This document shows positions 6,931 through 62,649 of a stretch of DNA of 64,000 nucleotides, one piece after another (positions within the stretch are counted from its first letter, which is position 1; every line of letters starts with the position of its first letter). A program made the translations under genes and the position numbers. The stretch is from contig NIVC01000513.1 of assembly GCA_002269645.1 (NCBI GenBank), positions 494,416 to 558,415 of the forward strand, written 5' to 3'. Origin of the DNA: Macrostomum lignano (Eukaryota). The notes under the pieces were generated by a model. The model was not told where the DNA came from. It saw nothing but the letters and a program-made list of their open reading frames with translations, and ran no database searches.

Positions 6931-6977
<47 letters not shown>

Positions 6978-6990: not shown

Positions 6991-7061
<71 letters not shown>

Positions 7062-26027: not shown

Positions 26028-27569
<1,542 letters not shown>

Positions 27570-37000: not shown

Positions 37001-37119
37001 AGGTCAAGGATCCGAGCGGCGCTCTCATCTCGTTGGAGACCGCCGAGAAGATGGGCATCCTGACTGTGGCCGACGCGGCAGCCGCTGCCACTTTAGCTGG
37101 CGGCGATCCGATGTCGCAG
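34027..37119 (+). CDS. Exon with spectrin-like helices, low-complexity linkers and plectin-repeat clusters (1031 codons)
   Basis: ccgtag|NVQQLL ... PMSQ|gtatgg; motifs such as FTIAEALNRGLID..STIVDPDTG..VPL..AI..GLLNPESG and RVSVFEALERGLID. Confidence 0.9.
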
Positions 37120-37685: not shown

Positions 37686-40076
37686 GCTTCGAACCCGGCT
37701 GCTTCCTCGCAGCAGTCATCCTCCTCGCAGACTTTCGGTGATGGTTTTCCTCAGCCCGATTCTGTCCCCCCTGCCCGCCCCGAGCAGCTCTGTCATATGC
37801 CTGCTTCTTTGCCTGAGGCGATTCAACCAGGAGATACCGATGATGAGCTGCTGCAGCGTCAGGCGCAGCAGGCGCAACAAGATCAGCCGATCAGCTCAGT
37901 ACGGATGGCCCGAGCAGGCGCCGACGCCTTCATGCAGCCAACCGGATCGGCGCCGCAGAACAAGTTTGGCGACAGGCGACTGGGAAACCGGTACGAACAG
38001 CAGGGCGAGGATGTGCCAATGGACGAGGAAGAGCAAATCAACGCTTTGCATGCGCTGGCCGACGAATTGGCAATGAGCAGCAGCCAGGAGGATGTTAGCC
38101 GACCGGCAAATCATCAAAATGATTTCTCGCATCCTGCCAATTCTAGTCACCTTGGCGATCCTGATAAACAAGAGAACTTTGCTAGCCAAGTTCATCGGAC
38201 TCGTGCTGGAGATTTGGTTTATCAAGTGGATCCTTCTCAATCAGGAATGTCTACTCAGCAAGTGGATCCTGCTCAATCAGGAATGTCTACTCAGCAAGTT
38301 GATCCTTCTCAACCAGGAATGTCTACTCAGCAAGTGGATCCTGCTCAATCAGGAATGTCTACTCAGCAAGTGGATCCTTCTCAACCAGGAATGTCTACTC
38401 AGCAAGTGGATCCTTCTCAATCAGGAATGTCTACTCAGCAAGTTGATCCTGCTCAATCAGGAATGTCTACTCAGCAAGTTGATCCTGCTCAACCAGGAAT
38501 GTCTACTCAGCAAGTGGATCCTTCTCAATCAGGAATGTCTACTCAGCAAGTGGATCCTTCTCAATCAGGAATGTCTACTCAGCAAGTGGATCCTGCTCAA
38601 CCAGGAATGTCTACTCAGCAAGTTGATCCTTCTCGATCAGCAGTGCCTACTCAGCAAGTGGATCCTGCTCAACCAGGAATGTCTACTCAGCAAGTTGATC
38701 CTTCTCAACCAGGAATGTCTACTCAGCAAGTGGATCCTGCTCAATCAGGAATGTCTACTCAGCAAGTGGATCCTGCTCAATCAGGAATGTCTACTCAGCA
38801 AGTTGATCCTGCTCAACCAGGAATGTCTACTCAGCAAGTGGATCCTTCTCAATCAGGAATGTCTACTCAGCAAGTTGATCCTGCTCAACCAGGAATGTCT
38901 ACTCAGCAAGTTGATCCTGCTCAATCAGGAATGTCTACTCAGCAAGTGGATCCTTCTCAATCAGGAATGTCTACTCAGCAAGTTGATCCTGCTCAACCAG
39001 GAATGTCTACTCAGCAAGTGGATCCTTCTCAATCAGGAATGTCTACTCAGCAAGTGGATCCTGCTCAACCAGGAATGTCTACTCAGCAAGTTGATCCTTC
39101 TCAACCAGGAATGTCTACTCAGCAAGTGGATCCTGCTCAATCAGGAATGTCTACTCAGCAAGTTGATCCTGCTCAACCAGGAATGTCTACTCAGCAAGTG
39201 GATCCTGCTCAACCAGGAATGTCTACTCAGCAAGTTGATCCTGCTCAACCAGGAATGTCTACTCAGCAAGTTGATCCTTCTCGATCAGCAGTGCCTACTC
39301 AGCAAATGGACCCTACACAGACCGGAGACTTTAATCGCCAAACTTATCCAAGTAGCTCCGGTGACAATGAAAAGGAGGCCGATTTCCACCACGGATACGA
39401 CACCAGCCTGCCCAACCAAGCGGCCGGTCGCCTGCAACCCCAGTGGTCGTCTTCAAAGCGCCCAACGGCGCTGCAACTGGCCATGGAAGGCGCCTACAAT
39501 CCAGAGCTGCTCTGCTGCTACCGGCCAGACACCCTGGAACCCGTCAGCTTGGCTCGAGCGATACGTGAGGATTTTCTCAGCCATCAAGGCACGAAATTGG
39601 CGATAAAGAGCGAAGGCGAACAGGCTCCTACCGAAATTAGTCTGGAACAGGCATTCGAGCTGGGAATTCTTAACCGCAATGAACTCGACGAAGACCGTTT
39701 GACCGAGTGTCTCGCCAACGGTACTCTCCGAGTCCTCAGTGCACCCTATGCCGGCTGCCTCTACTTGCGCCGGCTGGTCCAAGACAACTGGGACCCCGAG
39801 AGACTGCAGTTCAGCGATGGAGACGGTCGAAACGCGACATTTCCTCAAACTGTGGAGTCAGCTATTTTGCACCCGGATCTAGTGCTGGTGCGGGACCTCA
39901 GCGCTGGCGAGTCCGTGTCGCTGGCAACGGCGCTGAATCGCGAACTGGTGAACCCGGTGACTGGAGCGGTGCTCGACACCAACACAGGCTGCTCAGCACC
40001 GCTTGAAGAGGCCGCTAGGATCCGCATCATCTCGGCACCGCACGAGCGGCAGCTGGCGAGATCTATCGACAATCAG
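37686..40076 (+). CDS. Phase-0 exon (797 codons) with 30 copies of a 12-aa repeat plus plectin repeats
   Basis: gtttcag|ASNP ... DNQ|gtaggg; ISLEQAFELGIL, VSLATALNRELVNPVTGAVLDTNTG. Confidence 0.85.
38223..39302 (+). repeat. Coding 36-bp tandem repeat QVDP(S/A)Q(S/P)GMSTQ, 30 copies
   Basis: caagtggatcctgctcaatcaggaatgtctactcag; 1080 bp with no indels. Confidence 0.97.
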
Positions 40077-40786
40077 GTAGGGTGTTGAGTGAATACTGCT
40101 AATTGTTACCATTCACAACAGCGAGAAACCGTTTGAACATAAATCAAATTTTCTATCAAACATCATTTGAATCATTTTAGGGCTACTATTACTACGTAGG
40201 TGTCAGGTTCTTTCCCTTTTTGTCATGTGATTGCTACCAGTACTGAGCATGCTATTTATAAACTGCTCAATTACGTCGTAACTCCACGATCGATTGGAGA
40301 ATTATTTATCTCTTTAGATAATTTCGGCTCATCCACAAATGATTAATTTATACGAAAAAATATAGCCAATATTTGCACCATTCTCTTTAACTTCAAAGTC
40401 AAAATGTATGTTAAATTGCAAAATAATAACTAAATAAAGCACGAATATGTATTTAGCAAGTTCTCACAAAATAGCTCGTAGGAGATGCTTTTGTTATCTA
40501 ATGCATTGCGAATTTATCAGAATGCACCATGACAATGACAAAAGACAAAACAAAACTGTTAAAAGTTACAAGCAGTTCTACAGATACGTAGTTAGAAGCT
40601 TGCATCATATTGGAGTGAACCCTAGCAATAGCCGAGTAAGTAGCAAAATTCAATTTAAAAAGTGTCTCGATCATATCTTAGGAGCTATGTGAGAAAGTAG
40701 AGCTAGGTTGCACACATTTCAAGACTTTTCGGCCATTTCAAGCCAATATTGCCTCAATGATCCATTAAATTGACGAACGAACCCAG

Positions 40787-43700
40787 GTTCCCGATAACAG
40801 CGTCAGCAGCCGCAGCAGCGGCGGCGGTGGCGGCGGCGGCGGCGGCTTTGACTTGAAAGCGCAGCCGTCGCTGCCAACACAGACGGGCCTGTTTCAGACT
40901 GACCCCGTTAAGCCAGACCCGTCCGCTGGGCCCCAGGGCACCCCCAGTGGCCTTCCCAACTGCCTGACTGCCCGCCTGGGCCAGGACGGCGGGGTGACCA
41001 TGTTTAACTTTAGCCGTCGCCCGGAGCCCCTCGGAGGCTCCGACCCGCTGTTGGTTGGCTCAGGGACCTACCGAGCCGGCCTGGGCCCCGACTTTCAGCC
41101 CGTTCTGCTCTTTTTCGACACAGTCAGCGGCGAGCCGCTTTGCTTTGGCGACTGTCTGCAGAGAGGCATCTTTCACCTGGTCGAGTCCACTGTTGTCGAA
41201 GAATCGGGTCGTTCGACTCCACTTGAGACCGCTCTCCGCGAAAAACTCGTCCACTTGCACAACGGGGACTTGCTTAGCGAGGGTCATCAGCATCGGGTGG
41301 CCAGCTTGGAATTTTCCAGCGCTCTCCGATCTGGTCGACTAGTATTGCGGCTGGCTTTGGGTGTGGATTTCGTTACAGTCTTGGACGGTCTGGTAACTCA
41401 GCAAGTTGCTGACTCGCTGGCCGAGGTGATTAAGCTCGAGACGGGGCCGCTCGGTCTGTGGCATTGCTACGCTGGAATTGAAGACTCTGCGTCTGGAGCT
41501 CGACTGTCTCTAAGTCAAGCTGTTCGTCGGGGCCTCATTAGCCAGGAGGAGGCCGAGGCTCTGCTGAAACGTCTGCTACCCAGCTTTCGCGAGCTGGCAG
41601 CGTCCTACGACCCTCGAAGGCGTTGTCTGGTGAACCCGGCAAACGGACGGCCAATCAGTTTGGCAGAGGCGGTTCAACTGGGCTTGATCACCATGGACCA
41701 GCTGCACGAACTGCAACGGTGCAGGTGCACCGAGTCGCAATTCGATTGCGAAGATAATATCGACGAGGAAACCAACTGGCAGGAGACCGCCGATCAATTG
41801 AACGGATTAGCGGACACGCGTAATCCAGCGATTGTTAGCCAAGCAAAGAAACGTGCTCAAACCCCCAGCAGTGAAAGCGGGGAAAATCGGCTTGCAAATC
41901 AACTTCCAAGGTTGCCGGGAAGCAGCGGCGCAACGGCAGCTGCTTCTGAGTTGAGTCAACCTGAGCAAACTATTCCGACGCCTCCCCAGGCCAAGGTAGC
42001 AAAAGTTTCGGCTCCAGAAATTGACAGCGCGCAAGAGATTAAGGGTGCCAAAAGAGACGTGAGTCAGCCAGGCGTCGCGGAGAAGCCTCCACTACAGCAG
42101 CCAGGGCGGGAACTTTTGCACCCAGGCAGTGACTACAGCGGAGACACATTAAGCCAAGCTCAAGTGGACCCGAAGCACAGGCAGAATGAACCTACTCAAT
42201 TGAAACTCGCGCCAGTCAGTCGGACGCCCACTATTGCAAGAGAAGCGGATTACTCATTCGAAGAGAAGCCTACAGGTCAAGGATTGACAGAGCAGCTCTC
42301 AGGAGATTTCCACTACCAGATCCCAAAAGTCCAAACAGAGAAAGAGTCTATCTCTAAAACCCTTGCTGGCAATGAAGTTAATTCCGATACTAATTCCCGT
42401 GAAAGACCTGCTAGTCAACAGTCGAATGATAGGCAACTCACCGCAGTTGATCAGGTACCTGCCTCATTTAGTCCAAAAGAAAAAGTTGAGCAGTTAGTAG
42501 AACCAGCTGCTTTAAGAACGGATAAGCAACCGAAAGCAGATGCTGCCCTCAACGCAACTGCTAAATGTCAGCTGCCTGCATCAGACAGCACTTCTATAGA
42601 TCAACTTTCAGCATCAGAATCTGCATCACCAAAAGGTCAGACGGGTCTTGCTGGCCTGCCAACTACAGACTTCAATGGTACAGAACGGCACCAGCAACCT
42701 TTGACAGGCCTCAGTGAATCAGAAAAATTATCGACTACAGGCCACGCTGGATCAGAACGACAGCCTTTAACAGGCCTCACTGGATATGAGCAACAGCCAA
42801 CTACTGGCCTCGCTGGATCAGTTCAGCAGCAGCAATCTTCGAAAAGCCCCAGTGAATCCGAACAGCTACCGACTACAGGCCTTGCTGGATCAGAGCAACA
42901 GCCAACTACAGGTCTCGCTGAATCAGAACAGCAGCCAACTACAGGCCTTGCTAGAACAAAGCAACAGCCAACTACAGGTCTCGCTGGATCAGAACAGCAG
43001 CCAACTACAGGCCTCGCTGGATTAGAAAAACAACCAACTACAGGCCACGCTGGATCAGAGAAGCAGCCAACTACAGGCCTTACTGAATCTGAGCAACAGC
43101 CAACTACAGGCCTTGCTGGATCAGAACAGCAGCCAACTACAGGCCTCGTTGGATCAGAACAACAGCCGACTAGAAGTCTCACTGGATCTGAGCAACAGCC
43201 ATCTACAGGCCTCGCTCGATCAGAACAGCAGCTAACTACAGGCCTCGCTGGATTAAAACAACAGCAAACTACAGGCCACGCTGGATCAGAAAAACAGCAG
43301 CAGCCAACTACAGGCCACGCTGGAACAGAACAGCAGCAGCAAACTACAGGCCTTGCTGGATCAGAACAACAGCAGCAGCCAACTACAGGCCTTGCTGGAT
43401 CAGAACAACAGCCAACTACAGGCCTCGCTGGATTAGAAAAACAACCAACTACAGGCCACGCTGGATCAGAGAAGCAGCCAACTACAGGCCTTACTGAATC
43501 TGAGCAACAGCCAACTACAGGCCTTGCTGGATCAGAACAGCAGCCAACTACAAGCCTCGTTGGATCAGAACAACAGCCGACTAGAAGTCTCACTGGATCT
43601 GAGCAACAGCCATCTACAGGCCTCGCTGGATCAGAACAGCAGCTAACTACAGGCCTCGCTGGATTAAAACAACAGCAAACTACAGACCTTGCTGGATCAG

Positions 43701-46700
43701 AACAACAGCCAACTACAGGTCTCGCTGGATCAGAACAGCAGCCAACTACAGGCCTCGCTGGATCAGAGCAGCAGCCAACTACAGGCCTTGCTGGATCAGA
43801 ACAACAGCCAACTACAGGCCTTACTGAATCTGAGCAACAGCCAACTACAGACCTTGCTGGATCAGAACAACAGCCAACTACAGGTCTCGCTGGATCAAAA
43901 CAGCAGCCAACTACAGGCCTCGCTGGATCGGAGCAGCAGCCAATTACAGGTCTTGCTGGATCAGAACAGCAGCAGCAGCCAACTACAGGCCTTGCTGGAT
44001 CAGAACAGCAGCCAACTACAGGCCTTACTGAATCTGAGCAACAGCCAACTACAGGCCTTGCTGGATCAGAACAGCAGCCAACTACAGGCCTCGCTGGATT
44101 AAAACAACAGCCAACTACAGACCTTGCTGGATCAGAACAGCAGCCAACTACAGGTCTCGCTGGATCAGAACAGCAGCCAACTACAGGCCTCGCTGGATCA
44201 GAGCAGCAGCCAATTACAGGTCTTGCTGAATCAGAACAGCAGCAGCAGCCAACTACAGGCCTTGCTGGATCAGAACAGCAGCCAACTACAGGCCTTGCTG
44301 GATCAGAACAGCAGCCAACTACAGGCCTTGCTGGATCAGAGCAAAAGCCAACTACAGACCTCGCTGAATTAGAAAAACAGCAGCAGCCAACTGCAGGCCT
44401 CGCTGGATCAGAGCAACAGCCAACTACAGGCCACGCTGGATCAGAAAAACAGCAGCAGCCAACTACAGGCCACGCTGGAACAGAACAGCAGCCAATTACA
44501 GGTCTTACTGGATCAGAACAGCAGCCAACTACAGGCCTTGCTGGATCAGAACAACAGCCATCTACAGGCCTTGCTAGATCAGAACAGCAGCCAACTACAG
44601 GCCTCGCTGGATCAGAACGACAGCCTTCAACAGGCCTTGCTGGATCGGAGCAACGGCAGCAGCCAACTACAGGCCTTGCTGGATCAGAACAACAGCCAAC
44701 TACAGGCTTTTCTGGATCAGAACAGCAGCCAATTACAGGTCTTGCTGGATCAGAACGACAGCCTTCAAAAGGCTTCACTGGATCAGAACAGCAGCCAAGT
44801 ACAGGCCTTGCTGGATCAGAAAAGCAGCCAACTACAGGCCTTGCTGGATCAGAGCAGCAGCCAACTACAAAGCTCGCTGGATCAGAGCAACAGCAACAGC
44901 CAACTACAGGCGTCCCTGGATCGGAACAACAGCCAACTACAGGCCTTGCTGGATCAGAACAGCAGCCAATTACAGGTCTTGCTGGATCAGAACAGCAGCA
45001 GCAGCCAACTACAGGCCTTGCTGGATCGAAACAGCAGCCAACTACAGGCCTTGCTGGATCAGAACAACAGCCAACTACAGGCCTCGCTGGATCAGAACAA
45101 CAGCAGCAGCCAACTACAGGCCTTGCTGGATCAGAACAACAGCCATCTACAGGCCTTGCTAGATCAGAACAGCAGCCAACTACAGGCCTCGCTGGATCAG
45201 AACGACAGCCTTCAACAGGCCTTGCTGGATCGGAGCAACGGCAGCAGCCAACTACAGACCTTGCTGGATCAGAACAACAGCCAACTACAGGCTTTTCTGG
45301 ATCAGAACAGCAGCCAATTACAGGTCTTGCTAAATCAGAACGACAGCCTTCAAAAGGCCTCGCTGGATCAGAGCAACAGCCAACTACAGGCCACGCTGGA
45401 TCAGAAAAACAGCAGCAGCCAACTACAGGCCTTGCTGGCTCAGAACAACAGCCATCCACAGGCTTAGCTGGATCCGAGGAGCAGCCAGCTACAGGCGTCG
45501 CTGGATCAGATCAGCAGCTAACTACAGACCTTGCTGGATCAGAACAGCAGCCAACTACAGGCTTCGCTGGATCAGAACAGCAGCCAACTACAGGCCTTGC
45601 TGGATCAGAACAACAGCCAACTACAGGCCTTGCTGAATCAGAACAACAGCCAACTACAGGTCTTGCTGGATCAGAACAGCAGCAGCAGCAAACTACAGGC
45701 CTTGCTGGATCAGAACAGCAGCCAACTACAGGCCTCGCTGAATCAGAGGAACAGCCATCTACAGGCCTCGCAGGATCAGAGGAACAGCCAGCTACAGGCG
45801 TCGCTGGATCAGAACAGCAGCCAACTACAGGCCTCGCTGGATCAGAACAACAGAAGCAGTCAACTACAGGCCTCGCTGGATCAGAACGACAGCCTTCAAC
45901 AGGCCTCGCTGGATCTGAGCAACGGCAGCAGCCAACTACAGGCCTTGCTGGATCAGAACAGCAGCCAATTACAGGTCTTGCTGGATCAGAACAGCAGCAG
46001 CAGCCAACTACAGGCCTTGCTGGATCAGAACAGCAGCCAACTATAGGCGTCGCTGGATCAGAGGAACAGCAAACTACAGGCGTCGCTGGATCAGATCAGC
46101 AGCCAACTACAGGCCTCGCTGGATCAGAGGAACAGCAAACTACAGGCGTCGCTGGATCAGATCAGCAGCTAACTACAGACCTTGCTGGATCAGAACAACA
46201 GCCAACTACAGGCTTTTCTGGATTAGAACAGCAGCCAACTACAGGCGTCGCTGAATCAAAACAACAGCCAACTACAAGTCTTGCTGGATCAGAACAGCAG
46301 CAGCAGCAAACTACAAGCCTTGCTGGATCAGAGGAACAGCCAGCTACAGGCCTCGCAGGATCAGAGGAACAGCCAGCTACAGGCGTCGCTGGATCAGAAC
46401 AGCAGCCAACTACAGGCCTTGCTAGATCAGAACAGCAGCCAACTTCAGGCCTTGCTGGATCAGAAAAGCAGCCAACTACAGGCCTTGCTGGATCAGAACA
46501 GCAGCAGCAGCCAACTACAGGCCTTGCTGGATCAGAACAGCAGCAGCAGCCAACTACAGACCTTGCTGGATCAGAACAACAGCCAACTACAGGCTTTTCT
46601 GGATCAGAACAGCAGCCAATTACAGGTCTTGCTGGATCAGAACGACAGCCTTCAAAAGGCTTCACTGGATCAGAACAGCAGCCAAGTACAGGCCTTGCTG

Positions 46701-49700: not shown

Positions 49701-52700
49701 CTGGATCTGAGCAACAGCCAACTACCGGCGTCGCTGGATTAGAGCATAAGCCAACTACAGGTCTTGCTGGATCAGAAAAGCAGCCAACTACAGGCATTGC
49801 TGGATCAGAACAGCAGCCAAGTACAGGCCTTGCTGGATCAGAAAAGCAGCCAACTACAGGCCTTGCTGGATCAGAACAGCAGCCAACTACAAAGCTCGCT
49901 GGATCAGAGCAACAGCAACAGCCAACTACAGGCGTCCCTGGATCGGAACAACAGCCAACTACAGGCCTTGCTGGATCAGAACAGCAGCCAACTACAGGCC
50001 TTGCTGGATCAGAACAACAGCAGCAGCCAACTACAGGCCTTGCTGGATCAGAACAACAGCCATCTACAGGCCTTGCTAGATCAGAACAGCAGCCAACTAC
50101 AGGCCTCGCTGGATCAGAACGACAGCCTTCAACAGGCCTTGCTGGATCGGAGCAACGGCAGCAGCCAACTACAGACCTTGCTGGATCAGAACAACAGCCA
50201 ACTACAGGCTTTTCTGGATCAGAACAGCAGCCAATTACAGGTCTTGCTGGATCAGAACGACAGCCTTCAAAAGGCTTCACTGGATCAGAACAGCAGCCAA
50301 GTACAGGCCTTGCTGGATCAGAAAAGCAGCCAACTACAGGCCTTGCTGGATCAGAGCAGCAGCCAACTACAAAGCTCGCTGGATCAGAGCAACAGCAACA
50401 GCCAACTACAGGCGTCCCTGGATCGGAACAACAGCCAACTACAGGCCTTGCTGGATCAGAACAGCAGCCAATTACAGGTCTTGCTGGATCAGAACAGCAG
50501 CAGCAGCCAACTACAGGCCTTGCTGGATCGAAACAGCAGCCAACTACAGGGCTTGCTGGATCAGAACAACAGCCAACTACAGGCCTCGCTGGATCAGAAC
50601 AACAGCAGCAGCCAACTACAGGTCTCGCTGGATCAGAACGACAGCCTTCAACAGGCCTGGCTGGATCGGAGCAACGGCAGCAGCCAACTACAGACCTTGC
50701 TGGATCAGAACAACAGCCAACTACAGGCTTTTCTGGATCAGAACAGCAGCCAATTACAGGTCTTGCTAAATCAGAACGACAGCCTTCAAAAGGCTTCACT
50801 GGATCTGAGCAACAGCCAACTACAGGCCTCGCTGGATCAGAGGAACAGCAAAATACTGGCCTCGCTGGATCAGAGCAACAGCCAACTACAGGCCACGCTG
50901 GATCACAGCAACAGCCAACTACAGGCCTCGTTGGATCAGAACAACGGCCAACTAGAAGTCTCACTGGATCTGAGCAACAGCCAACTACCGGCGTCGCTGG
51001 ATCAGAGCATAAGCCAACTACAGGTCTTGCTGGATCAGAAAAGCAGCCAACTACAGGCATTGCTGGATCAGAACAGCAGCCAAGTACAGGCCTTGCTGGA
51101 TCAGAAAAGCAGCCAACTACAGGCCTTGCTGGATCAGAACAGCAGCCAACTACAAAGCTCGCTGGATCAGAGCAACAGCAACAGCCAACTACAGGCGTCC
51201 CTGGATCGGAACAACAGCCAACTACAGGCCTTGCTGGATCAGAACAGCAGCCAATTACAGGTCTTGCTGGATCAGAACAGCAGCAGCAGCAAACTACAGG
51301 CCTTGCTGGATCAGAACAGCAGCCAATTCCAGGTCTTACTGGATCAGAACAGCAGCAGCAGCCAACTACAGGCCTTGCTGGATCAGAACAACAGCAGCAG
51401 CCAACTACAGGCCTCGCTGGATCAGAACAACAGCAGCAGCCAACTACAGGCCTTGCTGGATCGAAACAGCAGCCAACTACAGGCCTTGCTGGATCAGAAC
51501 AACAGCCAACTACAGGCCTCGCTGGATCAGAACAACAGCAGCAGCCAACTACAGGTCTCGCTGGATCAGAACGACAGCCTTCAACAGGCCTGGCTGGATC
51601 GGAGCAACGGCAGCAGCCAACTACAGACCTTGCTGGATCAGAACAACAGCCAACTACAGGCTTTTCTGGATCAGAACAGCAGCCAACTACAGGTCTCGCT
51701 GGATCAGAACGACAGCCTTCAACTGGCCTCGCTGGATCTGAGCAACGGCAGCAGCCAACTACAGGCCTTGCTGGATCAGAACAACAGTCAACTACAGGCT
51801 TTTCTGGATTAGAACAGCAGCCAACTACAGGCGTCGCTGGATCAGAACAGCAGCCAACTACAGGCCTTGCTGGATCAGAACAGCAGCCAACTACAGGCCT
51901 TGCTGGATCAGAGCAAAAGCCAACTACAGACCTCGCTGAATTAGAAAAACAGCAGCAGCCAACTGCAGGACTCGCTGGATCAGAGCAACAGCCAACTACA
52001 GGCCACGCTGGATCAGAAAAACAGCAGCAGCCAACTACAGGCCTTGCTGGCTCAGAACAACAGCCATCCACAGGCTTAGCTGGATCCGAGGAGCAGCCAG
52101 CTACAGGCGTCGCTGGATCAGATCAGCAGCTAACTACAGACCTTGCTGGATCAGAACAGCAGCCAACTACAGGCTTCGCTGGATCAGAACAGCAGCCAAC
52201 TACAGGCCTTGCTGGATCAGAACAACAGCCAACTACAGGCCTTGCTGAATCAGAACAACAGCCAACTACAGGTCTTGCTGGATCAGAACAGCAGCAGCAG
52301 CAAACTACAGGCCTTGCTGGATCAGAACAGCAGCCAACTACAGGCCTCGCTGAATCAGAGGAACAGCCATCTACAGGCCTCGCAGGATCAGAGGAACAGC
52401 CAGCTACAGGCGTCGCTGGATCAGAACAGCAGCCAACTACAGGCCTCGCTGGATCAGAACAACAGAAGCAGTCAACTACAGGCCTCGCTGGATCAGAACG
52501 ACAGCCTTCAACAGGCCTCGCTGGATCTGAGCAACGGCAGCAGCCAACTACAGGCCTTGCTGGATCAGAACAGCAGCCAATTACAGGTCTTGCTGGATCA
52601 GAACAGCAGCAGCAGCCAACTACAGGCCTTGCTGGATCAGAACAGCAGCCAACTATAGGCGTCGCTGGATCAGAGGAACAGCAAACTACAGGCGTCGCTG

Positions 52701-54157
52701 GATCAGATCAGCAGCCAACTACAGGCCTCGCTGGATCAGAGGAACAGCAAACTACAGGCGTCGCTGGATCAGATCAGCAGCTAACTACAGACCTTGCTGG
52801 ATCAGAACAACAGCCAACTACAGGCTTTTCTGGATTAGAACAGCAGCCAACTACAGGCGTCGCTGAATCAAAACAACAGCCAACTACAAGTCTTGCTGGA
52901 TCAGAACAGCAGCAGCAGCAAACTACAAGCCTTGCTGGATCAGAGGAACAGCCAGCTACAGGCCTCGCAGGATCAGAGGAACAGCCAGCTACAGGCGTCG
53001 CTGGATCAGAACAGCAGCCAACTACAGGCCTTGCTAGATCAGAACAGCAGCCAACTTCAGGCCTTGCTGGATCAGAAAAGCAGCCAACTACAGGCCTTGC
53101 TGGATCAGAACAGCAGCAGCAGCCAACTACAGGCCTTGCTGGATCAGAACAGCAGCAGCAGCCAACTACAGGCCTTGCTGGATCAGAACAACAGCAGCAG
53201 CCAACTACAGGCCTTGCTGGATCAGAACAGCAGCCAATTACAGGTCTTGCTGGATCAGAACAGCAGCAGCAGCCAACTACAGGCCTTGCTGGATCAGAAC
53301 AGCAGCCAACTAAAGGCGTCGCTGGATCAGAGGAACAGCAAGCAACAGGCGTCGCTGGATCAGATCAGCAGCTAACTATAGACCTTGCTGGATCAGAACA
53401 GCAGCTAACTACAGGCGTCGCAGGATCAGAACAGCAGCCAACTGCAGGCCTTGCTGGATCAGAAAAACAGCAGCAGCCAACTACAGGCCTCGCTGGATCA
53501 GAACAGCAGCACCAACCTTTAATAGGCCTACCTGGATCAGCATCGATGTCAACTATAGATCCTTCTGGATCAGTGAAGCAGCCAAGTCTTTCTAAATCAA
53601 AGCATGAAGAACCAACCGTCATCTCAGTTTCTGATCATCTCCTACAAACTGGTTCTGGCCAATTGGAATTGCAGCCGTCTGATTTGGAGCTGCAGCCATC
53701 AGTGCATTCAGTTGGAGCTGAGCCAGCAATATTGAGCGGTGATTCGGATGTTCAACAGAGAAACGATCAAAGCGTCGCGGATCCAAAGCTTTCATCGACA
53801 GCCGTACACGATCCGGTGGAACAACCTGCCTTCCCTACGCGATCTGTGGAATCTCATCAGCTGGTCGAGGAACAAGCAATCCCATGCTTTAGCGGTATCG
53901 ATAAAGAGAAACCTGCAGATAGTGCTGGTGAGCCTTTCTTAAAGCATGCCAACGATTTTTCATCGGACAAGGACACATCGGGTCAAGCAGCAGATTCAAC
54001 AGAACAGACTGTTGCAGAACTGAATGGCCCGGACTTGGCTGAGGGGGTATCCAGTGGTAAACCAGCGGCGGGAAGCATCCCAGAGCTGTCTCTGGGTGCC
54101 GCGGGTCAGTCTGAACTCGCCGTCAAAGACGCGCTGCAAGTGAGCAGTCCAAATCAG
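40787..54157 (+). CDS. Giant phase-0 exon (13,371 nt, 4457 codons): plectin repeats, then a giant low-complexity repeat
   Basis: cccag|GTT CCC (purine-rich acceptor, weaker) ... AAT CAG|gttggt; uninterrupted ORF; plectin-like SGARLSLSQAVRRGLI and LVNPANGRPISLAEAVQLGLI. Confidence 0.85.
42731..53515 (+). repeat. Coding 33/39-bp tandem repeat PTTGLAGSEQQ(QQ), roughly 300-320 units, with higher-order duplications
   Basis: Unit ccaactacaggccttgctggatcagaacagcag; copy number is estimated from length, not counted. Confidence 0.97.
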
Positions 54158-54668
54158 GTTGGTAAAATAGTCTTTTTTGAAAAAAAAGTTGCGCAAGAGT
54201 GTCGCTGATTTTCGCTTGGCTTACGTAGTGGACATAACTTAGGAAACAAAATTGGACCTAATATTTGAAATTTAACAGCCACTTGATTGATTAAAGTTTT
54301 TGATTGCGATTTTTACTATAAATCAGCTACCAGATCTCGTGATCACCTCAGTCACACATCCGATTATCGAGTGGACCGCACGGAGTGTGAATAATAACGA
54401 AGCTTTGATCGCTGTAGCTAAAGAACGCTTGGCCAGCAAATTATTTTTGTCATTTTTTTTCTAAAACCAATGCGCGAACATACGCTAAATTTCTGGCCAT
54501 AGCGAAAATACGTCTTAGGGATTGCATTGCAGCTGCTGATCAGTATTTTCTAATGCTTCTTTTACAGTTTTACCTTGCAATATTACTTGCGCAACTATTT
54601 TTGTTTTGTTGCTTTCTCAAACATAACAAATCTAACACTTTTCCTTTTTTGTTCGGCCACCCATGCAG

Positions 54669-57600
54669 ACCTCGAGCTTCCAAACCCCTAACCAAAGCTC
54701 TAACCAACATGCTCAGCCCCAGAATGCTGGTAGTCATTTAGTCTCTGGCTTGCAGACTAAGCCTAACTCGCTCGGTCAGTCGGCTTCTCCATCAGGCCTG
54801 TCGAGCGCGGACGTGGATTTTGAGAAGCAGCAAGGCTTAGAAGAAGCTGTGGATAAGGCTTTTGATGCCATTCAGTCAGGTCGTGAACGCGTCTCTATCG
54901 AGCGCAGTCTGCCCAAGAAACATGACGACGACCCAGATTTCAATTCTCAGCAGTCCGAAGCTGATGACCACGAAATCGTGGACATCTCAGTAAGTTCAGA
55001 CGCTTCGAGCGTCTGCTTTGAGGACGTCATTCACGGTCAGCAGATTGAGCTAGACGTTTCCATGCTGGTAGAGTTAGAAGATGAAGTGGTTGAGGCTTGC
55101 ACCTCTGGTGCGTCGTATGCTGAGCCAGTGCAGGCGAACAGACACGTGGTTCAGGAGGTGCCAGTGCAGCTGGCAGCGGCTGTCAGCTATCCTGTGCTGT
55201 CTAAAGCAAAGATTTCAGACCATGTTGTTCTTGAGGGCGCTGGTGTGACTAATGCCGAGCTTGGAGACAGATCAAGCCGTCCGGAGTCAGCAGACATCGA
55301 TAGCTCGAAATTTATTCTGAACTCAAAAACTGCTGAACATGAAGTGTCGCCATCTACGACTACGATAAAAGAGCAGCCTTGCGATACAAGCGACTCGCTG
55401 GATCAACTAACGGATCAAGAAATGGGCAGCATTCTGCCTGGAGAGTCTCTGTTCCTTCCCTCCGAAGCTGTCAGCTCACTGCCGGTTGGTAAACGCAAGC
55501 TGCCTGACAGTCTGGAGTTCGAGCCTGATAAAGGCGTTAGCGACACGGAGTATCGTTTGAAACGACCTTTTTCCGAAACAGAGATGTTAGCCAACACGGA
55601 GAGGCGCGAATCTGTTCTTAAACAAGAGCAGCAAACTCGAAAGTCGATTCCAGCTGCTGAGAGTTTGAGTGAAAATAAAGACTCAATTAAGCTTGTGAGC
55701 GCATTGAAAGATGAGAACGAGAGCACCACGGAAACACAGCCAAGCAGAATAACCAAATCCCAAAGCTCGAATGACACTGAGAAACCTACCATAAAAGCTG
55801 TTAAAGGTGTCGAGAAAATTGTACACTCCGAGTTTCAAGTTCTCGCTGTGCAGCTTCGTACGGAGTCTGCAAGCCTGAAAGATCAGCCTTATGAATCTGA
55901 TGACAACTTGGTGCCCACCACCAGGACCGGCAAGCTAGAGCGCTATGAAGACCAATCGGTCAGTTCCAACGCTTCGGAAGAAATCCTTCATAACCAAGCT
56001 GAACCCGCCGAGAAGTATCTCGATGTCGAGCCTTCTCTACACCCGGACTCCACAAAGCCTCACGAATCCGCAGACAGAGATGATTTGATGAAGAATAAGC
56101 CTGACAGGCCGAATTTTGCGGCCAATGATGGCGAGAATGCCCAAACAGCCGACTCAGAAAATTTATTAGATAATGCGCCCCGCCCATCAGCCAGCGAAGA
56201 AGAGCTGGTATCTTTTCTCGAAGAAATCCAGCAAAAAGTCAGAATGGACAACAAGAAAGAGATTAGAGAGGTGAGCGAAACTCCAATCGCTGATGATGAT
56301 GAATCTGCATCCGAATCGTCAATTGGTGCCAAATCTGAGAGAGACGCATTTGAACAGCGCAAGGACAAATTGGACGATGAGCTAAAATCAGGTGACGGTG
56401 GAAAGACCCTCGACTTTTGGGGTGACGAGGGCAAGGCCGAGAGGGTGAACGTTCAGGCATCATCACCGGCTGGATTGCAGGAGTTTCCTTCAAAGCTTAA
56501 TTCTCAGGACACAGATGAAAGTAACCAATTTGGCAAGGATTCAAAGGAATACCGCACACCTTCAGATGCTGCAGAAACTGATCGAGGCGCGAAATCATTT
56601 AGGAATGATCTGCCTGAAAATTTTCAGACTGTTGTTGATACGGAGACGGCCGTTCTTGCAGTACAGCTGCAGGCTGGTGAACCAATGCGCGAATATGACG
56701 ACGAGCAAATGTCAGTTTCTGATTCTGAAGAAGTCGAAGAGTTCATTTCAGTGGTAATTAAAAATCCAGCCGAACACTTCAAGCGCATGGCTTGGGAGGC
56801 ACAGACCACAGCCGATGACGTTCTTTGTTCAGGGGCAGAGCAATCTTCTCACTCTGATTGTATTCGCCAGCTCAGTGAGCAGGAAGACTCTGAACCAATT
56901 AGAAACCGGAATGAGGATGTCGATAAGCGCAAAGAAACTACAGAGAATGCCTTGGAGAGTGACATCAATGAGCCGACTGGTTTTGCTGCAGATTCTGGTG
57001 TCACTCAGTCAGCCGACGTCAAAGATGTTGAGCCGGACTCACAAAAGTTCAGTGGAAAGACTGACCAAATTTTACAGTCTAATCGACACCAGGATGAAGA
57101 GTCGGAAATCGCAGACGCTGCAGAGAAGCTGGGCGGTGACGCTGAACAGGAAGAGGAACTTGATCAAAACCGTCAACCATTCCAGGAATCTGGAAAAGTA
57201 CAGGAAAGTGAGCGAGCTGCTGAGAGTGCGATGGACGACGGCTCATCTATTCACAGTTCATCTAAAGATTCATCACTAATTGGCCCGCCTCATATCACCA
57301 GTGTTTCAGACACCCAGCAAGACGTGCATAAATCAACGCTAGATAATCACGAGCATCAGCCAATCGAAATGCGAACAACGGCCTCACAGTTTTATGCTAC
57401 TTTCCCGGATGATAAGGAAATTAGAAGCAAAGCAGAAGACAGAGCGCCTCTTCAGCGTGTTGCGGAGACGGAAACCTATGTCCTAGCTGTGCGACTGTGC
57501 AGGAATGATGAAAATCTTCTGTCTGGCTTTCCTGACCAGGCTTCTACCGAGCCAAATGAAACTGTGCCAGTTCCAGAGTCCCTTCGGCGCAATGATCTTT

Positions 57601-60600
57601 CGTCAAATCATTTTGAGCCGATTCCAAAGCAGAGCGGTGCAAATGAAGGAGAATCAGCTGGCAACAGTACCGAGGATTCCAAGAGAGGCGACTCTCCATC
57701 TGGTTTTCCAACCATCGGGATTGCGAAAAGTTTCGAAAGTACTACAGAAGCGGAAAGACCGTCTTCAAAACATCTTTCGAAATCATGTGAGCCGACTGAT
57801 CTGCTTAGCGAAGAATGTCTCAAGAAACACAGTCCCTCACGTCAGCAGATGCCAGGCTCCAAACACTTCCCGGAAACTGCTGTGGAGAAAATGAGCAAGC
57901 ATTCTGACGTCACAGCAGGACTAAAAGACGTAAATACTGTTTCTCAAACAACAGAGGAAAGTCAGTTTGACACTGAAGATATAGAAGCAAATGAGCCTGA
58001 GTGTGAGCCACTTGTACAAAGCAGTTTTGACTCGAGTCACGTGCTTGCAGCTCAGCTACGTCAGGAAGCTGACGATGATGACTACGACTCAGACTCCGGG
58101 TCAAGTCCTAGCGATGCTACAGTCATTCTCAAATCAAGCCAACAGGCACCTGACAAGGTGTATAAACTGACCGATTCAAAAGACAACAGCTTTGGGTCTG
58201 AACCAAGCCAGGAAGAGTTTAACTGTTCAAAACCGGACCATAGTGAGTCTGCTGGTGACCATAAGCTTGATTCCAACAGCGAATCTCTCAGCAAAAAATC
58301 AAGGCTAGAAAATCAACAGTTGACAGCTCGAGCTGACCTTGACCAACCTGCGTGTCGAGGTTTCAGTCCTGCGGATTCCGAGTTCTACCCAGACCTCCGG
58401 CCTAATGAAGTTGTGTCTAATGGAAAAGACATTCACTCGAATGACATGGCAGTCGTGCAACAAGAAGATTCTGAGGTCCCTATTTTAGGCACAAGTAACG
58501 AGAATTTACGACAAGTTGATTCGTTGAAGAATCTGCATCCCTCATCAAGCCGCAGCGAGCAGCCAGAAAGCGGAGTCAAGCTTGCAAGCAGAGAGGAACC
58601 GACAGCTGATAATCAGGAGTTCCCTGCAGTGGAAAAAGAATTTGAAACGATTTCGATTTCGCTCGAGCTCGATGAGCCCCAGAATGACAACCAACGATTA
58701 CGTCACGAAAGTTCGCTGAGTAATGCTGGAGGTGCTGAGGTTGAGTCTAAGGTGACAGAGAGCGAAATTATATCAATCTCGATGGAGCTGGATGAACCTG
58801 AAGAATTCCAAGACTACAGAATCGGTAGATCGTTGACATCCGATAGTCTGCAGAAAAGAAAACGACTTAACTCGTTTGGGACACTGGAAGAGACAAGGGA
58901 AATTTCCGAGGAAAGTCCCGATGTCCAGCGAGTCCATATGAAAATGGACATCGAACATCATGGGCTGGCTGTCACGCTTCGCGATGATAAGACAGACGAT
59001 GAGGAAAACGCGTTTGCAAAATGCCCCGAAAGCTCCAGCAAAGTAGTCGAAGGTCAGTCTGACGAATTAAGCTCTTGTGAAATCGCTGCTGACGATCTGA
59101 CAAGTGTTAAGCCCGAAGCTGAAGTGCATTTAGGTGAATTTGAAAAAGAAATAGATTTCGATTCGAATGAACAGCGGGAAGATTCACAATCTCTCGACAC
59201 TGCAACTGTGCCATCTGATGAAGATTTTGAGTCCTTGAAAAAGCCCGATAGCAGGTACAGTGACATCGAATCCCTCAGCATTTCCTTAGAGCCACCATTT
59301 GAAGAGGAAGAAACCGGCGAAGCAGGCTTGATTGAGGAGTTCCGAAGACCAGTTCTTGAAACTTCTGGGCTTGCAAATCGTACTTTTACGCTGGATACTG
59401 AGACAGTGGTGCTTGCTGTGTCGCTGCAAATACCTGATCAGTCAGCTGATGCCGAAAACGTTAGACAGCGTAGTGACAACCTACCGACACCAGAAGGCCT
59501 CGGCGAAGAAGCAACGGAAAAGACAACCAGTCTGGAGATTTCAATGCACCTTGATGATGACACAAACCCAGATGCAGATAGTTCAGCTAGTGATAAAGAC
59601 TTGATGTCGGTAGATCCAACAGCAGGCGATGCGTCCGTCACGTCAGTTACGCAGCCTATCAATATTAAGCATGAAAGTTTTGATGATTCAGGAAAAAGTA
59701 CGGATTCGCAAAATCAACTGCAGCCTCATCAGAACAGTCGCGAGCCTTCATTCAACCAGTCGGAAAGTGACTTCGAAGTACTTTTCGAGGAAGATAATGA
59801 GTCCATTGGTCGCAGAGGATCTAACCTTTCCCATCGAGATGCCACTTCCGGGTATAGGCATGACGTCGTAACGCCTCATGTGGTTGAACGAGAGACAGCT
59901 GTGTTGGAAGTTAAACTGAGAAGTTCTGGAAAGGACTCCCGAGATTCAGTTTGCTCGGTTCCAGACTCCAAGGGCACAGGTTTGAATGAGAACCCCTCTG
60001 AATCCGGACTTGAATCCGCAATCGAGCTGGAGAGAAGCTTTGAATCGCCAGTGGAAACTGAACTTGATGGTGCAAGTGTTGAGTTTGAGCAGTCTCTGCA
60101 CATCGATAGCCAAGCTGAGGCTTCAACTGAAAACGATGCAAATCAACCGATTTCATCCGATTTTCATTCAAAAGATAAATTAGGGAGCGATGAAAAAACA
60201 GTGGACGAACGCGATTTAAATTTAAAGAGGACTGATTTCGTGTGCGAAGTTAGGCGTGCAGCAAAGGATGCTATCAGGGTGATAAACTCAGAAACACTGG
60301 TGCTCGCAGTTCACCTCAGATGCGAGAGTGACATAAAGACAGCTGGATTTGCACCTAAACCGGAAGTTGCTGAACTAAACGAAGAACAAGTAGAACAGAT
60401 GGAGTTTGCAACAACAAAACAGTCTATGCCAACTCAGCATCCCATGGCTGTGACAGAAATCGAAATCAAGGCGGCCGAGCCGATGCGAATAACGCCTGAA
60501 CAGGAGTTCCATACCACTGGCCAACCAGAATCAGCGTTGCAATCTCCTCAGCATGGATATGCTTGTTCAACCGGACGAAAATACGAAGCTTCTGTCGACA

Positions 60601-61538
60601 ATATTAACATTCCAAGCGACAGTGAAACCATCGAAATGGTCGAAGAGGAGACAGAAGACGACTCTATTGGCAATTTCACGCCGCGCAGCGAAGATCTATC
60701 GATGTCGTTTCCACTGCCGAAGAAGTCTGCGAATCTGCCTCAGCAAAGACGATCGAACGCTGAGCAAGCTGAAGCGTCTCCAACGCTCGACGACACTTCG
60801 CTGATGTCTCTAGGATCAATGTCCATGGACATAGTGTACACATCGGATTATCCAGAGCCAGCGCTTGAGTCCCGAACATGCAAGTCACCGTTGCTAGATG
60901 ATCGAATCTCCTACGACGACAGCAGCCTTGCCAGTCCGTGCCGTGAAGACACGCATGTTGTTGTGGGCGGCAAGCCGCTGACATTCAAGGAAGCAATCGA
61001 GACGGGAGCTATTGATCCAAATGGTGTGACTCTGTCGCTGGAGTCGCCAATAGGCCGGCGAATTACACTTCAAGAAGCTATTGACGATCAGCTAGTGGAT
61101 CCAAACACTGGAGTGCTCCACGTACCACACGGGCCCGCCTATCCGCTCTCCATGGCCGCGCAGCTCGGCTTTCTTCACGGCATCGATCCTGCCTATCTGA
61201 TCGGCACACGAGGCTCGCTAGACAAAAACGACAGCAAAGAGCAGCAACCGGCGCTACCGTTGGATGAACCTTCGTCAGCCAGAACTTCAGTCGCCGTTGA
61301 TGAACCTCTCAGCATTGATGTCGAATGCTCAAATCAGTGCATGGGCGCCGATTCGCTTATGCCGAGCTTGACCGAGCGAGTTAGCAGCAGAGACCCTCCC
61401 CAAATCCCGCCCAGTCCCTCGATCCCCGATGACGGCGGCGACCGCAACCCGCCGCCGCCCGCTGTTGCCAGCAGCGAAGGCTGCGGCTTTGTTCACAGCG
61501 ACAACGACGCAAGAGACTTGGAGTCAGAAGACGCAGTG
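54669..61538 (+). CDS. Phase-0 exon (2290 codons): acidic Ser/Glu/Asp-rich region with dispersed motifs and a terminal plectin-repeat cluster
   Basis: catgcag|ACC TCG ... GCA GTG|gtatgc; PLTFKEAIETGAID..RRITLQEAIDDQLVDPNTG. Confidence 0.85.
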
Positions 61539-62502: not shown

Positions 62503-62649
62503 ATTGACGCCAAGAAGATGGCCGAAGATCTGCTGAAAGATCTCGAAAAGGAGCTTCATTCGTTGGATGGAATCGAGGACTGGCTGCTGGCCCAGGGCCC
62601 GGCTAATCTGGACGAGCAGAACGACACGAAGCTGCTCGAAGGGCATCAG
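62503..62649 (+). CDS. Spectrin-repeat exon (IDAKKMAEDLL...LEGHQ)
   Basis: caatccttag| ... CAG|gtatat; 147 nt; contains IEDWL. Confidence 0.85.

What the first reader, a model, noticed from the sequence alone, without database searches (positions are those of the whole stretch)
37686..61538. Three consecutive giant phase-0 exons allow modular length tuning of up to 7,544 aa
Exons of 797, 4457 and 2290 codons all begin and end in phase 0, so any subset can be skipped in frame (8 combinations). Each brings its own type of disordered sequence plus plectin repeats. Failure to splice gives nearby stops (40088, 54208, 61586), which could yield plectin/VAB-10A-like isoforms without the spectrin rod. 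This resembles titin PEVK splicing transplanted into a cytolinker.
Basis: partly seen in the sequence, partly recalled or inferred. Interest (0 to 1): 0.75.

Follow-up and report, generated by a model that had tools for sequence, protein, structure and literature searches.

The report
Flatworm spectraplakin plakin-repeat exons, one unannotated
The three giant exons are the middle "plakin-repeat" part of the Macrostomum lignano spectraplakin (Shot/MACF1-type cytoskeletal linker) gene; the only deposited gene model, built from RNA-seq, includes two of them and skips the 13.4-kb third in frame, which matches the known optional plakin-repeat exon of other spectraplakins rather than a new splicing principle.

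Summary
Windows 37686-40076, 40787-54157 and 54669-61538 are open for 797, 4457 and 2290 codons. All have AG|...|GT borders and all are in phase 0.

The window matches the Macrostomum lignano Mlig_3_7 assembly. GenBank model PAA81789.1, which derives from an RNA-seq-based annotation, maps to it at 100% identity. That model uses junctions 37119>37686, 40076>54669 and 61538>62503. Exons 1 and 3 are therefore in the deposited model with the predicted borders, and exon 2 is skipped in frame.

Exon 2 occurs in no protein of a 5.8-billion-cluster database. It still looks like coding sequence:
- It gives a Pfam Plectin hit.
- Its GC content is exon-like between AT-rich introns.
- Its 313-unit array has no stop codon.
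- A ~98%-identical duplicate contig keeps the same splice sites and an open frame with only 3015 codons.

Phase 0 is not special here: 12 of the 15 introns in the model are phase 0. A fourth large symmetric plakin-repeat exon (34027-37119) lies just upstream. Stops soon after the donors, and poly(A)-like hexamers in the introns, occur at chance level.

Optional internal plakin-repeat exons are already known in Shot, MACF1 and dystonin. I found no evidence for eight isoforms, for titin-like tuning, or for VAB-10A-like truncated isoforms. This is a new member of a known kind, of modest interest.

The parts
34027..37119 (+). Exon 0: a fourth large phase-0/phase-0 exon (1031 codons), just upstream of the finding. 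It carries the end of the plakin domain, disordered stretches and the best plakin repeats in the window.
   Evidence: Part of PAA81789.1. Pfam Plectin E=1.7e-18 with 3 stretches.
37686..40076 (+). Exon 1 (797 codons), present in the deposited gene model.
   Evidence: Open, with AG|..|GT borders. 100% match to PAA81789.1 residues 2190-2986. The junction with exon 0 also appears in UniProt A0A1I8J3L5 and A0A1I8FYC2.
38223..39314 (+). In-frame minisatellite inside exon 1: 30 copies of 36 nt (peptide QVDPAQSGMSTQ).
   Evidence: Tandem Repeats Finder; translation.
39327..40076 (+). Degenerate plakin-repeat block at the C-terminal end of exon 1.
   Evidence: Pfam Plectin at 12.9 bits, below the cut-off. 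An HMM built from the window's own repeats gives 12.0 bits, above all 200 shuffles. Many BLASTP alignments to plakin-repeat protein P0006, E from 8e-7 to 2e-4.
40077..40786 (+). Intron between exon 1 and exon 2 (GC 0.345).
   Evidence: Composition. The acceptor at 40787 has a weak pyrimidine tract, 0.45.
40787..54157 (+). Exon 2 (4457 codons): unannotated, skipped in the deposited model, a probable cassette exon.
   Evidence: Open with AG|..|GT borders in phase 0. Absent from PAA81789.1 and from every protein in the database. GC 0.50-0.56, against 0.35-0.37 in the flanking introns. The duplicate contig L001 keeps the same sites with 3015 open codons.
41009..41704 (+). Plakin-repeat block near the N-terminus of exon 2 (aa ~75-306).
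   Evidence: Pfam Plectin E=3.4e-10 with 2 stretches. BLASTP to P0006.
42734..53510 (+). In-frame minisatellite inside exon 2: 313 units (242 of 11 aa, 68 of 13 aa; consensus GLAGSEQQPTT), with 99.5%-identical multi-kb internal duplications.
54158..54668 (+). Intron between exon 2 and exon 3 (GC 0.37). The exon 2 donor is CAG|gttggt, the only donor in the gene with T at position +3.
54669..61538 (+). Exon 3 (2290 codons), present in the deposited gene model. About 2080 aa are acidic and disordered, with 8 copies of a 15-aa hydrophobic motif. A plakin-repeat block and a Pro-rich tail follow.
   Evidence: 100% match to PAA81789.1. All 5 indels relative to the duplicate copy are multiples of 3, unlike most of those in the introns. 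Motif count.
60948..61166 (+). Plakin repeats at the C-terminal end of exon 3 (aa ~2094-2166).
   Evidence: This is the only part of the last 1200 aa of exon 3 with relatives outside M. lignano. The best is E=1.3e-16, and the four best hits, which I scanned, carry Pfam Plectin at up to 479 bits.
61539..62502 (+). Intron between exon 3 and exon 4.
62503..62649 (+). Exon 4 (49 codons, phase 0/0), leading into the spectrin-repeat-like exons downstream (weak, sub-threshold Spectrin match at 63072-63479).

Best explanation
The region is the internal plakin-repeat region of the Macrostomum lignano spectraplakin gene, the counterpart of Drosophila shot, C. elegans vab-10 and vertebrate MACF1/dystonin. 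It lies between the plakin domain and the spectrin rod.

Shown: the region is encoded by four consecutive large exons whose lengths are multiples of three (1031, 797, 4457 and 2290 codons). Each exon carries a short block of degenerate plakin repeats. The rest of each exon is long, lineage-specific, low-complexity sequence. In exons 1 and 2 this sequence is an in-frame minisatellite.

Shown: the deposited gene model, from an RNA-seq-based annotation, contains exons 0, 1 and 3 and skips exon 2 in frame.

Inferred: exon 2 is a real but optional cassette exon with weak splice sites. It would be included only in a minority of transcripts or in particular cells, and it would add about 4,457 residues. 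Of these, about 3,600 are a Q/G/T/S/E-rich flexible spacer.

Inferred: the plakin-repeat blocks are the working modules, for docking to intermediate filaments or junctions as in other plakins. The repeat arrays mainly set the distance between them. Their length is set by minisatellite expansion and contraction as much as by splicing: the two genomic copies differ by 1,442 codons.
For: Gene identity:
- CH domain (E=3.4e-19), Plectin repeats and weak spectrin-repeat matches occur in the expected order.
- The window equals PAA81789.1 at 100% identity.

Junctions: 37119>37686, 40076>54669 and 61538>62503 are read directly from that model. The annotation was built from RNA-seq with StringTie, TACO and a de novo transcriptome.

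Exon 2 looks coding:
- 13,371 nt are open in one frame only.
- Pfam Plectin E=3.4e-10.
- GC steps from 0.345 to 0.555 at 40787 and from 0.50 to 0.37 at 54157.
- The same AG and GT sites, with an open frame of 3015 codons, are kept in the duplicate contig NIVC01000071.1.

Weak exon 2 splice sites fit a cassette exon: acceptor pyrimidine fraction 0.45, and a donor gttggt with T at +3.

Absence from GenBank is weak evidence against exon 2.

Precedent: an optional 10,497-nt plakin-repeat exon in shot, and internal plakin-repeat regions spliced into all spectraplakins.
Against: No transcript, EST or protein record contains any part of exon 2.

The duplicate copies are only about 2% diverged. dN/dS is about 0.5 and the introns are equally conserved, so conservation between them proves little.

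The test for missing stop variants inside the array is weak (Fisher P=0.04, and the repeat units are not independent). A young array whose unit has no stop in that frame would stay open for a while without selection.

The length of the array, and its 99.5%-identical internal duplications, could be partly assembly artefacts of a PacBio/Canu assembly.

I could not inspect reads, so the 40076>54669 junction rests on the deposited model.
Confidence: 0.6

Rival explanations
1. Exon 2 is not expressed. It would be a former plakin-repeat exon, or an intronic minisatellite grown on one, that now lies inside a 14.6-kb intron between exons 1 and 3. The exon 1 to exon 3 splice would then be constitutive and there would be no length tuning.
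For: Exon 2 is absent from the RNA-seq-based model and from every protein in the database. Both its splice sites are the weakest or near-weakest in the gene. The genome is full of non-coding minisatellites, at least 12 in this window, so a large array needs no function. Comparison with the duplicate copy cannot demonstrate constraint.
Against: All 4457 codons are open, including about 650 + 215 non-repetitive codons. A second copy with a different repeat number (3015 codons) is also open. The other frames carry 30-311 stops, apart from one minus-strand frame with only 9. GC content is exon-like, with sharp steps exactly at the proposed splice sites. There is a Pfam-significant plakin-repeat block. 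The GenBank filters would have removed a repeat-rich minor isoform.
Confidence: 0.25
2. Exon 2 is constitutively included in the main transcript, and the exon-2-less model is a minor or reconstruction-biased product. Short reads cannot be assembled through a 10.8-kb array, so the assembler kept only the path that avoids it.
For: The array consists of near-identical units with multi-kb internal duplications at 99.5% identity, which short-read assemblers cannot traverse. The older ML2-based models break inside the much smaller exon 1 array.
Against: A 40076>54669 junction with canonical sites in perfect frame has to come from spliced reads or a de novo contig (method). The weak exon 2 splice sites argue against efficient constitutive use.
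Confidence: 0.1
3. All three exons would be independently skippable, giving eight isoforms, as a titin-PEVK-like length regulator. Intron retention after each exon would add VAB-10A/plectin-like isoforms that end in plakin repeats and lack the spectrin rod.
For: All four junctions are phase 0. One skip, of exon 2, is on record. Stops follow each donor within 4-17 codons. AATAAA or ATTAAA hexamers exist in each intron.
Against: Phase 0 is the gene-wide norm, 12 of 15 introns. Exons 1 and 3 have strong acceptors, 0.73 pyrimidine, and are both in the only model. Stops and hexamers are at chance frequency (about 4.7 hexamers expected, 4 seen, my estimate). The composition is not PEVK-like. There is no record of any transcript ending in these introns.
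Confidence: 0.05

Closest known systems
Drosophila Short stop (shot) plakin-repeat exon, Shot-PH isoforms (Roper & Brown 2003, PMC2173965)
   Same: Both are giant exons between the plakin domain and the spectrin rod of a spectraplakin. The shot exon is 10,497 nt, that is 3 x 3499 codons, so its length is a multiple of three. It is included or skipped by alternative splicing. Its plakin repeats are separated by gaps rather than packed into 4.5-repeat domains.
   Different: Shot has one giant exon with 33 to about 40 repeats. Here the region is split into four exons. Each holds only a 200-250 aa block of repeats, and more than 7,000 codons are lineage-specific low-complexity or tandem-repeat sequence. 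Inclusion of the largest exon is unproven here.
Vertebrate MACF1b and dystonin isoforms with an internal plakin-repeat region
   Same: An internal plakin-repeat region is spliced in between the plakin domain and the spectrin rod. The 2017 review states that all spectraplakins have such isoforms.
   Different: The vertebrate regions hold about 20 (MACF1) or 9-11 (dystonin) well-formed repeats organised in plakin-repeat domains. They have no kilobase-scale in-frame minisatellites.
C. elegans VAB-10A
   Same: It has a plakin-repeat exon in the single spectraplakin locus of an invertebrate that possesses cytoplasmic intermediate filaments.
   Different: In the worm the exon supplies an alternative C-terminus. 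Here the deposited transcript splices onward from exon 3 into exon 4 and the spectrin-repeat-like exons, and nothing indicates termination in the introns.
Titin PEVK region differential splicing
   Same: Both involve symmetric exons that encode disordered sequence, so skipping changes protein length without breaking the frame.
   Different: By established knowledge, PEVK consists of roughly a hundred small exons of about 28 residues rich in P, E, V and K, with tissue-specific skipping that sets the spring length. Here there are three or four giant exons with Q/G/T/S/E-rich or acidic Ser-rich composition, a single documented skip, and no evidence of elasticity.
Unidentified eukaryote contig ERZ25084518 ctg217050 (locus L002)
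   Same: It has two consecutive giant plakin-repeat open frames (at least 2977 and 2243 codons) separated by a plausible phase-0 GT..AG intron of about 660 nt. This is the same 'string of giant symmetric plakin-repeat exons' layout.
   Different: Its repeats are dense: 28 motif matches per frame and Pfam Plectin at 459 bits. It has no long minisatellite spacers. The organism and its transcripts are unknown.

Membership tests
Spectraplakin (Shot / VAB-10 / MACF1 / dystonin) | N-terminal actin-binding domain of two calponin-homology (CH) domains | tested here: met
   Pfam CH E=3.4e-19 on P0003 (CH2). The CH1 exon fragment 22340-22432 gives E=2.4e-5 (24.9 bits, just under the 26-bit cut-off). Both lie in PAA81789.1 exons at 21816-28513.
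Spectraplakin (Shot / VAB-10 / MACF1 / dystonin) | Plakin domain (spectrin-like repeats) following the CH domains | tested here: inconclusive
   Spectrin 28.2 bits (cut-off 29.9), Spectrin_4 19.1 bits and Spectrin_SYNE1 25 bits are all just below the curated cut-offs. Position and length fit.
Spectraplakin (Shot / VAB-10 / MACF1 / dystonin) | Plakin (plectin) repeats | tested here: met
   Pfam PF00681: exon 0 E=1.7e-18, exon 2 E=3.4e-10. Exon 3 C-terminus matches plakin-repeat proteins at E=1.3e-16. Exon 1 matches by pairwise alignment only.
Spectraplakin (Shot / VAB-10 / MACF1 / dystonin) | Long spectrin-repeat rod followed by EF-hands and a GAS2 (microtubule-binding) domain | not testable with these tools
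   The window ends at 64000, just inside the rod. There is only a weak Spectrin hit (24.2 bits) at 63072-63479. The C-terminal domains lie outside the window.
Optional internal plakin-repeat region (Shot-PH / MACF1b type) | Plakin-repeat exon(s) placed between the plakin domain and the spectrin rod, with length a multiple of three | tested here: met
   Exons at 34027-37119, 37686-40076, 40787-54157 and 54669-61538 are all phase 0/0. They lie between the plakin-domain exons and exon 62503-62649.
Optional internal plakin-repeat region (Shot-PH / MACF1b type) | Transcripts both with and without the exon(s) | tested here: inconclusive
   A model without exon 2 is deposited. No record with exon 2 exists, and none lacks exons 0, 1 or 3. 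I had no read-level data.
Titin-PEVK-like spring with graded exon skipping | Many small symmetric exons of a P/E/V/K-rich ~28-residue motif | tested here: not met
   There are three or four exons of 797-4457 codons. The exon 2 repeats have 8% P and 3.2% K+R, and are dominated by Q, G, T and S.
Titin-PEVK-like spring with graded exon skipping | Tissue-dependent graded inclusion that sets protein length | not testable with these tools
   I had no tissue-resolved or read-level expression data.
VAB-10A / BPAG1e-type isoform ending in plakin repeats | Alternative 3' end (stop plus polyadenylation) directly after a plakin-repeat exon | tested here: inconclusive
   Stops lie 4, 17 and 16 codons past the donors. 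One AATAAA and three ATTAAA hexamers occur in 2,185 nt of intron, about the chance number. I had no 3'-end data.

The most novel reading that the evidence does not exclude
Exon 2 is expressed in some cell type, for example epidermal or adhesive-organ anchor cells rich in intermediate filaments. That would give a spectraplakin with an 8,575-residue plakin-repeat region and, by extrapolation, a total of more than 13,000 residues. This would be larger than the 8,846-residue Shot isoforms. Its 3,600-residue spacer would be an in-frame minisatellite whose copy number differs by 1,442 codons between the duplicated gene copies. Linker length would then be set by repeat expansion in the genome, on top of one on/off splicing choice.
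Probability: 0.3. Interest if true: 0.45.

Novelty: new member of a known kind. Interest (0 to 1): 0.3.

Why it matters
For spectraplakin biology, this adds a flatworm example of the conserved optional internal plakin-repeat region. Flatworms, unlike flies, have cytoplasmic intermediate filaments. It also shows that the region can be split into a string of symmetric giant exons and filled with lineage-specific spacers.

For the Macrostomum lignano resource, three corrections follow:
- A 13.4-kb exon is probably missing from the annotation.
- The 'hypothetical protein' PAA81789.1 is a spectraplakin.
- The model ends early at an apparent frameshift in the assembly.

The finding does not open a new principle of splicing or of length control.

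Tried and rejected
1. Looking for exon 2 in proteins. A word-indexed search with its 649 non-repeat N-terminal residues returned nothing at E<=1e-5. This leaves expression undecided, because GenBank submission removed repeat-overlapping transcripts.

2. Using the duplicate contig L001 to show purifying selection. The copies are about 98% identical, dN/dS is about 0.5 in exon 2 and exon 3, and the introns are 98-99% identical. That is too little divergence. Only the exon 3 indel pattern helped: 5 of 5 are multiples of 3, against lengths 1,1,1 and 1,1,5,6 in the introns. My exon 2 segments ended in the array border, so the 75-76-nt 'indels' there are cutting artefacts.

3. Testing for missing stop-creating variants among the 33-nt units. 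One of 6 possible stop variants occurs (never as an actual stop), against 57 of 93 non-stop variants. Fisher P=0.04, and the units are not independent, so this is weak.

4. Pfam on the whole exons missed the repeats of exons 1 and 3. They needed sub-segments, an HMM built from the window's own repeats, an exhaustive HMMER search and pairwise alignment.

5. The literature holds nothing for Mlig013505 or for a Macrostomum spectraplakin.

6. An Rfam scan of the window found nothing.

7. I rejected the idea that phase-0 symmetry marks a special modular design, and the idea that the nearby stops or poly(A)-like hexamers mean anything.
Full report
**What is in the sequence**

| Exon | Window coordinates | Codons |
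|---|---|---|
| 1 | 37686-40076 | 797 |
| 2 | 40787-54157 | 4457 |
| 3 | 54669-61538 | 2290 |

Each is preceded by AG and followed by GT. None contains a stop. The read-through stops end at 40088, 54208 and 61586 as stated.

**Source of the window**

A search with exon 3 found a single cluster, from Macrostomum lignano. One member of that cluster is GenBank PAA81789.1 (locus tag BOX15_Mlig013505g1, 'hypothetical protein', 5543 aa). It maps to the window at 100% identity. The window therefore matches the Mlig_3_7 assembly of this free-living flatworm.

**What the gene is**

The order of domains is that of a spectraplakin (Shot, VAB-10, MACF1, dystonin):
- Calponin-homology exons lie at about 21.8-28.5 kb (Pfam CH E=3.4e-19).
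- Spectrin-like plakin-domain exons follow at 29-34 kb. Their Pfam scores fall just under the curated cut-offs.
- Plectin repeats come next. A weak, sub-threshold Spectrin match follows from 63.1 kb.
- The EF-hand and GAS2 end lies outside the window.

**Exon map and phases**

I threaded PAA81789.1 onto the window and obtained every junction:

... 33478-33888 | 34027-37119 | 37686-40076 | 54669-61538 | 62503-62649 | 62736-62981 | 63072-63479

Three points follow.
- Exon 1 is joined directly to exon 3 (ARSIDNQ|TSSFQTP). Exon 2 is therefore skipped, in frame.
- 12 of the 15 introns are phase 0. An additional large symmetric exon (34027-37119, 1031 codons) with the best plakin repeats lies just upstream. 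Phase-0 symmetry is thus the norm in this gene and not a mark of the three exons. Four such introns in a row has a probability of about 0.4.

**How much weight the model carries**

The Mlig_3_7 annotation is not ab initio. It was built from STAR-mapped RNA-seq with StringTie, merged with a de novo transcriptome by TACO, and given coding regions by TransDecoder (PMC5730564). A 14.6-kb canonical in-frame junction therefore reflects spliced reads or a cDNA contig.

The absence of exon 2 from it is weak evidence. TACO was run with isoform-frac 0.75. For the GenBank submission, 'transcripts overlapping repeat annotations' were removed. Older UniProt models from the ML2 assembly confirm only the exon 0 to exon 1 junction, and they break inside the exon 1 array.

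**Is exon 2 a real exon?**

Against:
- No protein among 5.8 billion clusters contains its 649 non-repeat N-terminal residues.
- Its acceptor has a poor pyrimidine tract (0.45, against 0.50 or more for 14 of the 15 used acceptors).
- Its donor, CAG|gttggt, is the only one in the gene with T at +3.

For:
- All 13,371 nt are open in one frame. The array part has 30 and 59 stops in the other + frames and 9-311 on the minus strand.
- Residues about 75-306 are plakin repeats (Pfam E=3.4e-10; alignment to a plakin-repeat protein).
- GC content is 0.50-0.56 inside the exon, against 0.345 and 0.37 in the flanking introns. The steps fall exactly at 40787 and 54157.
- The duplicated copy of the locus, contig NIVC01000071.1 (locus L001), keeps identical acceptor and donor sequences. 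Its exon is open for 3015 codons, again a multiple of three, although its array is 4.3 kb shorter.

The two copies are only about 2% apart. dN/dS is about 0.5 throughout and the introns are just as similar, so this comparison cannot prove constraint. In exon 3, all five indels between the copies are multiples of three, while most of those in the introns are not.

On balance I read exon 2 as a genuine, weakly spliced cassette exon (0.6). The main rival is an unexpressed relic (0.25).

**What the exons encode**

| Exon | Low-complexity part | Plakin-repeat block |
|---|---|---|
| 1 | 30 copies of QVDPAQSGMSTQ (38223-39314) | About 200 aa at the C-terminus; under the Pfam cut-off, but aligns repeatedly to a plakin-repeat protein |
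| 2 | 313 units of GLAGSEQQPTT-type (242 of 11 aa, 68 of 13 aa; 42734-53510) | N-terminal block |
| 3 | About 2080 aa, acidic and Ser-rich (21% D+E) | C-terminal block plus Pro-rich tail |

The exon 2 array contains internal duplications at 99.5% identity: 46535-49030 equals 50150-52645, and 45353-46586 equals 51965-53198.

In an exhaustive HMMER search of 1.8 billion representative proteins, only residues about 2094-2166 of exon 3 have relatives outside M. lignano. The four best of those hits, the ones I scanned, are Plectin-repeat proteins. That search used only the last 1200 aa of exon 3. For the whole exon, the word-indexed search found only the M. lignano cluster.

The repeats are few and degenerate.

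**The rest of the interpretation**

- Truncated isoforms: stops 4-17 codons past a donor are what any intron gives. The four AATAAA/ATTAAA hexamers in 2,185 nt of AT-rich intron match my chance estimate of about 4.7. Nothing points to VAB-10A-like truncated isoforms. The deposited transcript runs on from exon 3 into exon 4 and the spectrin-repeat-like exons.
- Titin PEVK: the analogy fails on composition and on architecture.
- Eight isoforms: of the eight combinations, only one (exons 1 and 3 without exon 2) is on record.

**Comparison with what is known**

- Drosophila shot has a 10,497-nt (3 x 3499) plakin-repeat exon between the plakin domain and the rod. It is included by alternative splicing and gives isoforms of up to 8,846 residues (PMC2173965).
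- A metagenomic contig of an unidentified eukaryote shows two consecutive giant plakin-repeat frames joined by a plausible phase-0 intron.

The principle is therefore known. Three things are particular to this locus:
- The region is split into four exons.
- More than 7,000 codons are lineage-specific spacer, much of it in-frame minisatellite, in a genome whose introns are also full of minisatellites.
- The largest exon is unannotated and differs by 1,442 codons between the duplicated copies.

**Caveats**

- I could not see reads.
- Array lengths come from a Canu/PacBio assembly polished with Pilon and may be inexact.
- The same assembly has two compensating frame breaks just downstream, near 63474 and 63817. 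These cut the GenBank model short.

**Verdict**

This is a new member of a known kind, of modest interest (0.3).

Noticed in passing
window 63474 and 63817: There are two compensating one-base frame breaks in a spectrin-repeat exon. The reading frame of 63072-63479 shifts at GAGTTTCGCTGAACTG (NQRREF|AELLRQ) and shifts back at TTCTGGACACT (EAFW|DTLNGL). The first break ends GenBank model PAA81789.1 at 5543 aa. They are probably residual indel errors of the PacBio assembly, but real mutations in one of the duplicated copies are not excluded.
   Followed up: partly
window 55815-60344 (exon 3, aa 383-1892): Eight copies of a 15-aa motif, h-x-h-[DE]-[ST]-E-T-x-V-L-A-V-x-L-[RQ], are spaced 133-307 aa apart in otherwise acidic disordered sequence. 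Eight are seen against 0.06 expected in shuffles, and all are kept in the duplicate copy. A second short motif (ISISLELDEP-like) occurs 3 times. The function is unknown. They may be remnants of an old tandem duplication or a recurring binding site.
   Followed up: partly
window 46535-49030 = 50150-52645; 45353-46586 = 51965-53198: There are multi-kb duplications at 99.5% identity inside the exon 2 array. All offsets are multiples of 3. They reflect either very recent expansion or over-expansion by the assembler. The duplicate contig's array is 4.3 kb shorter.
   Followed up: partly
window 34959-35321 (inside exon 0): UniProt model A0A1I8FYC2 removes a GT..AG-bounded, in-frame 363-nt piece of exon 0. 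GenBank PAA81789.1 and A0A1I8J3L5 keep it. It is either a predicted or a real intra-exonic intron in a disordered stretch.
   Followed up: partly
window 1262-1545, 2220-2782, 3168-5440, 6635-7061, 9387-10093, 10743-12107, 19433-20177, 20811-21458, 22585-23196, 24347-25186, 26028-27569, 31102-31964: Non-coding minisatellites and microsatellites fill the upstream region and the introns of the gene. They include an 18-nt unit in 130 copies and a (CT) run of about 775 copies. The coding arrays of exons 1 and 2 look like the same mutational habit tolerated within a reading frame.
   Followed up: no
L002 399-16702 (ENA ERZ25084518 ctg217050): An unidentified eukaryote in a metagenome assembly has two consecutive giant open frames densely packed with plakin repeats (at least 2977 and 2243 codons). 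A plausible phase-0 intron (9312-9973) separates them. The 'string of giant symmetric plakin-repeat exons' layout is therefore not unique to Macrostomum.
   Followed up: partly
L001 (NIVC01000071.1, 1-18218 reversed): This is a second copy of the locus, about 98% identical, truncated by the contig end. Its GenBank model PAA91820.1 is 'partial' and starts inside exon 3. It is consistent with the duplicated blocks at 95% identity or more that were reported for the DV1 line.
   Followed up: partly
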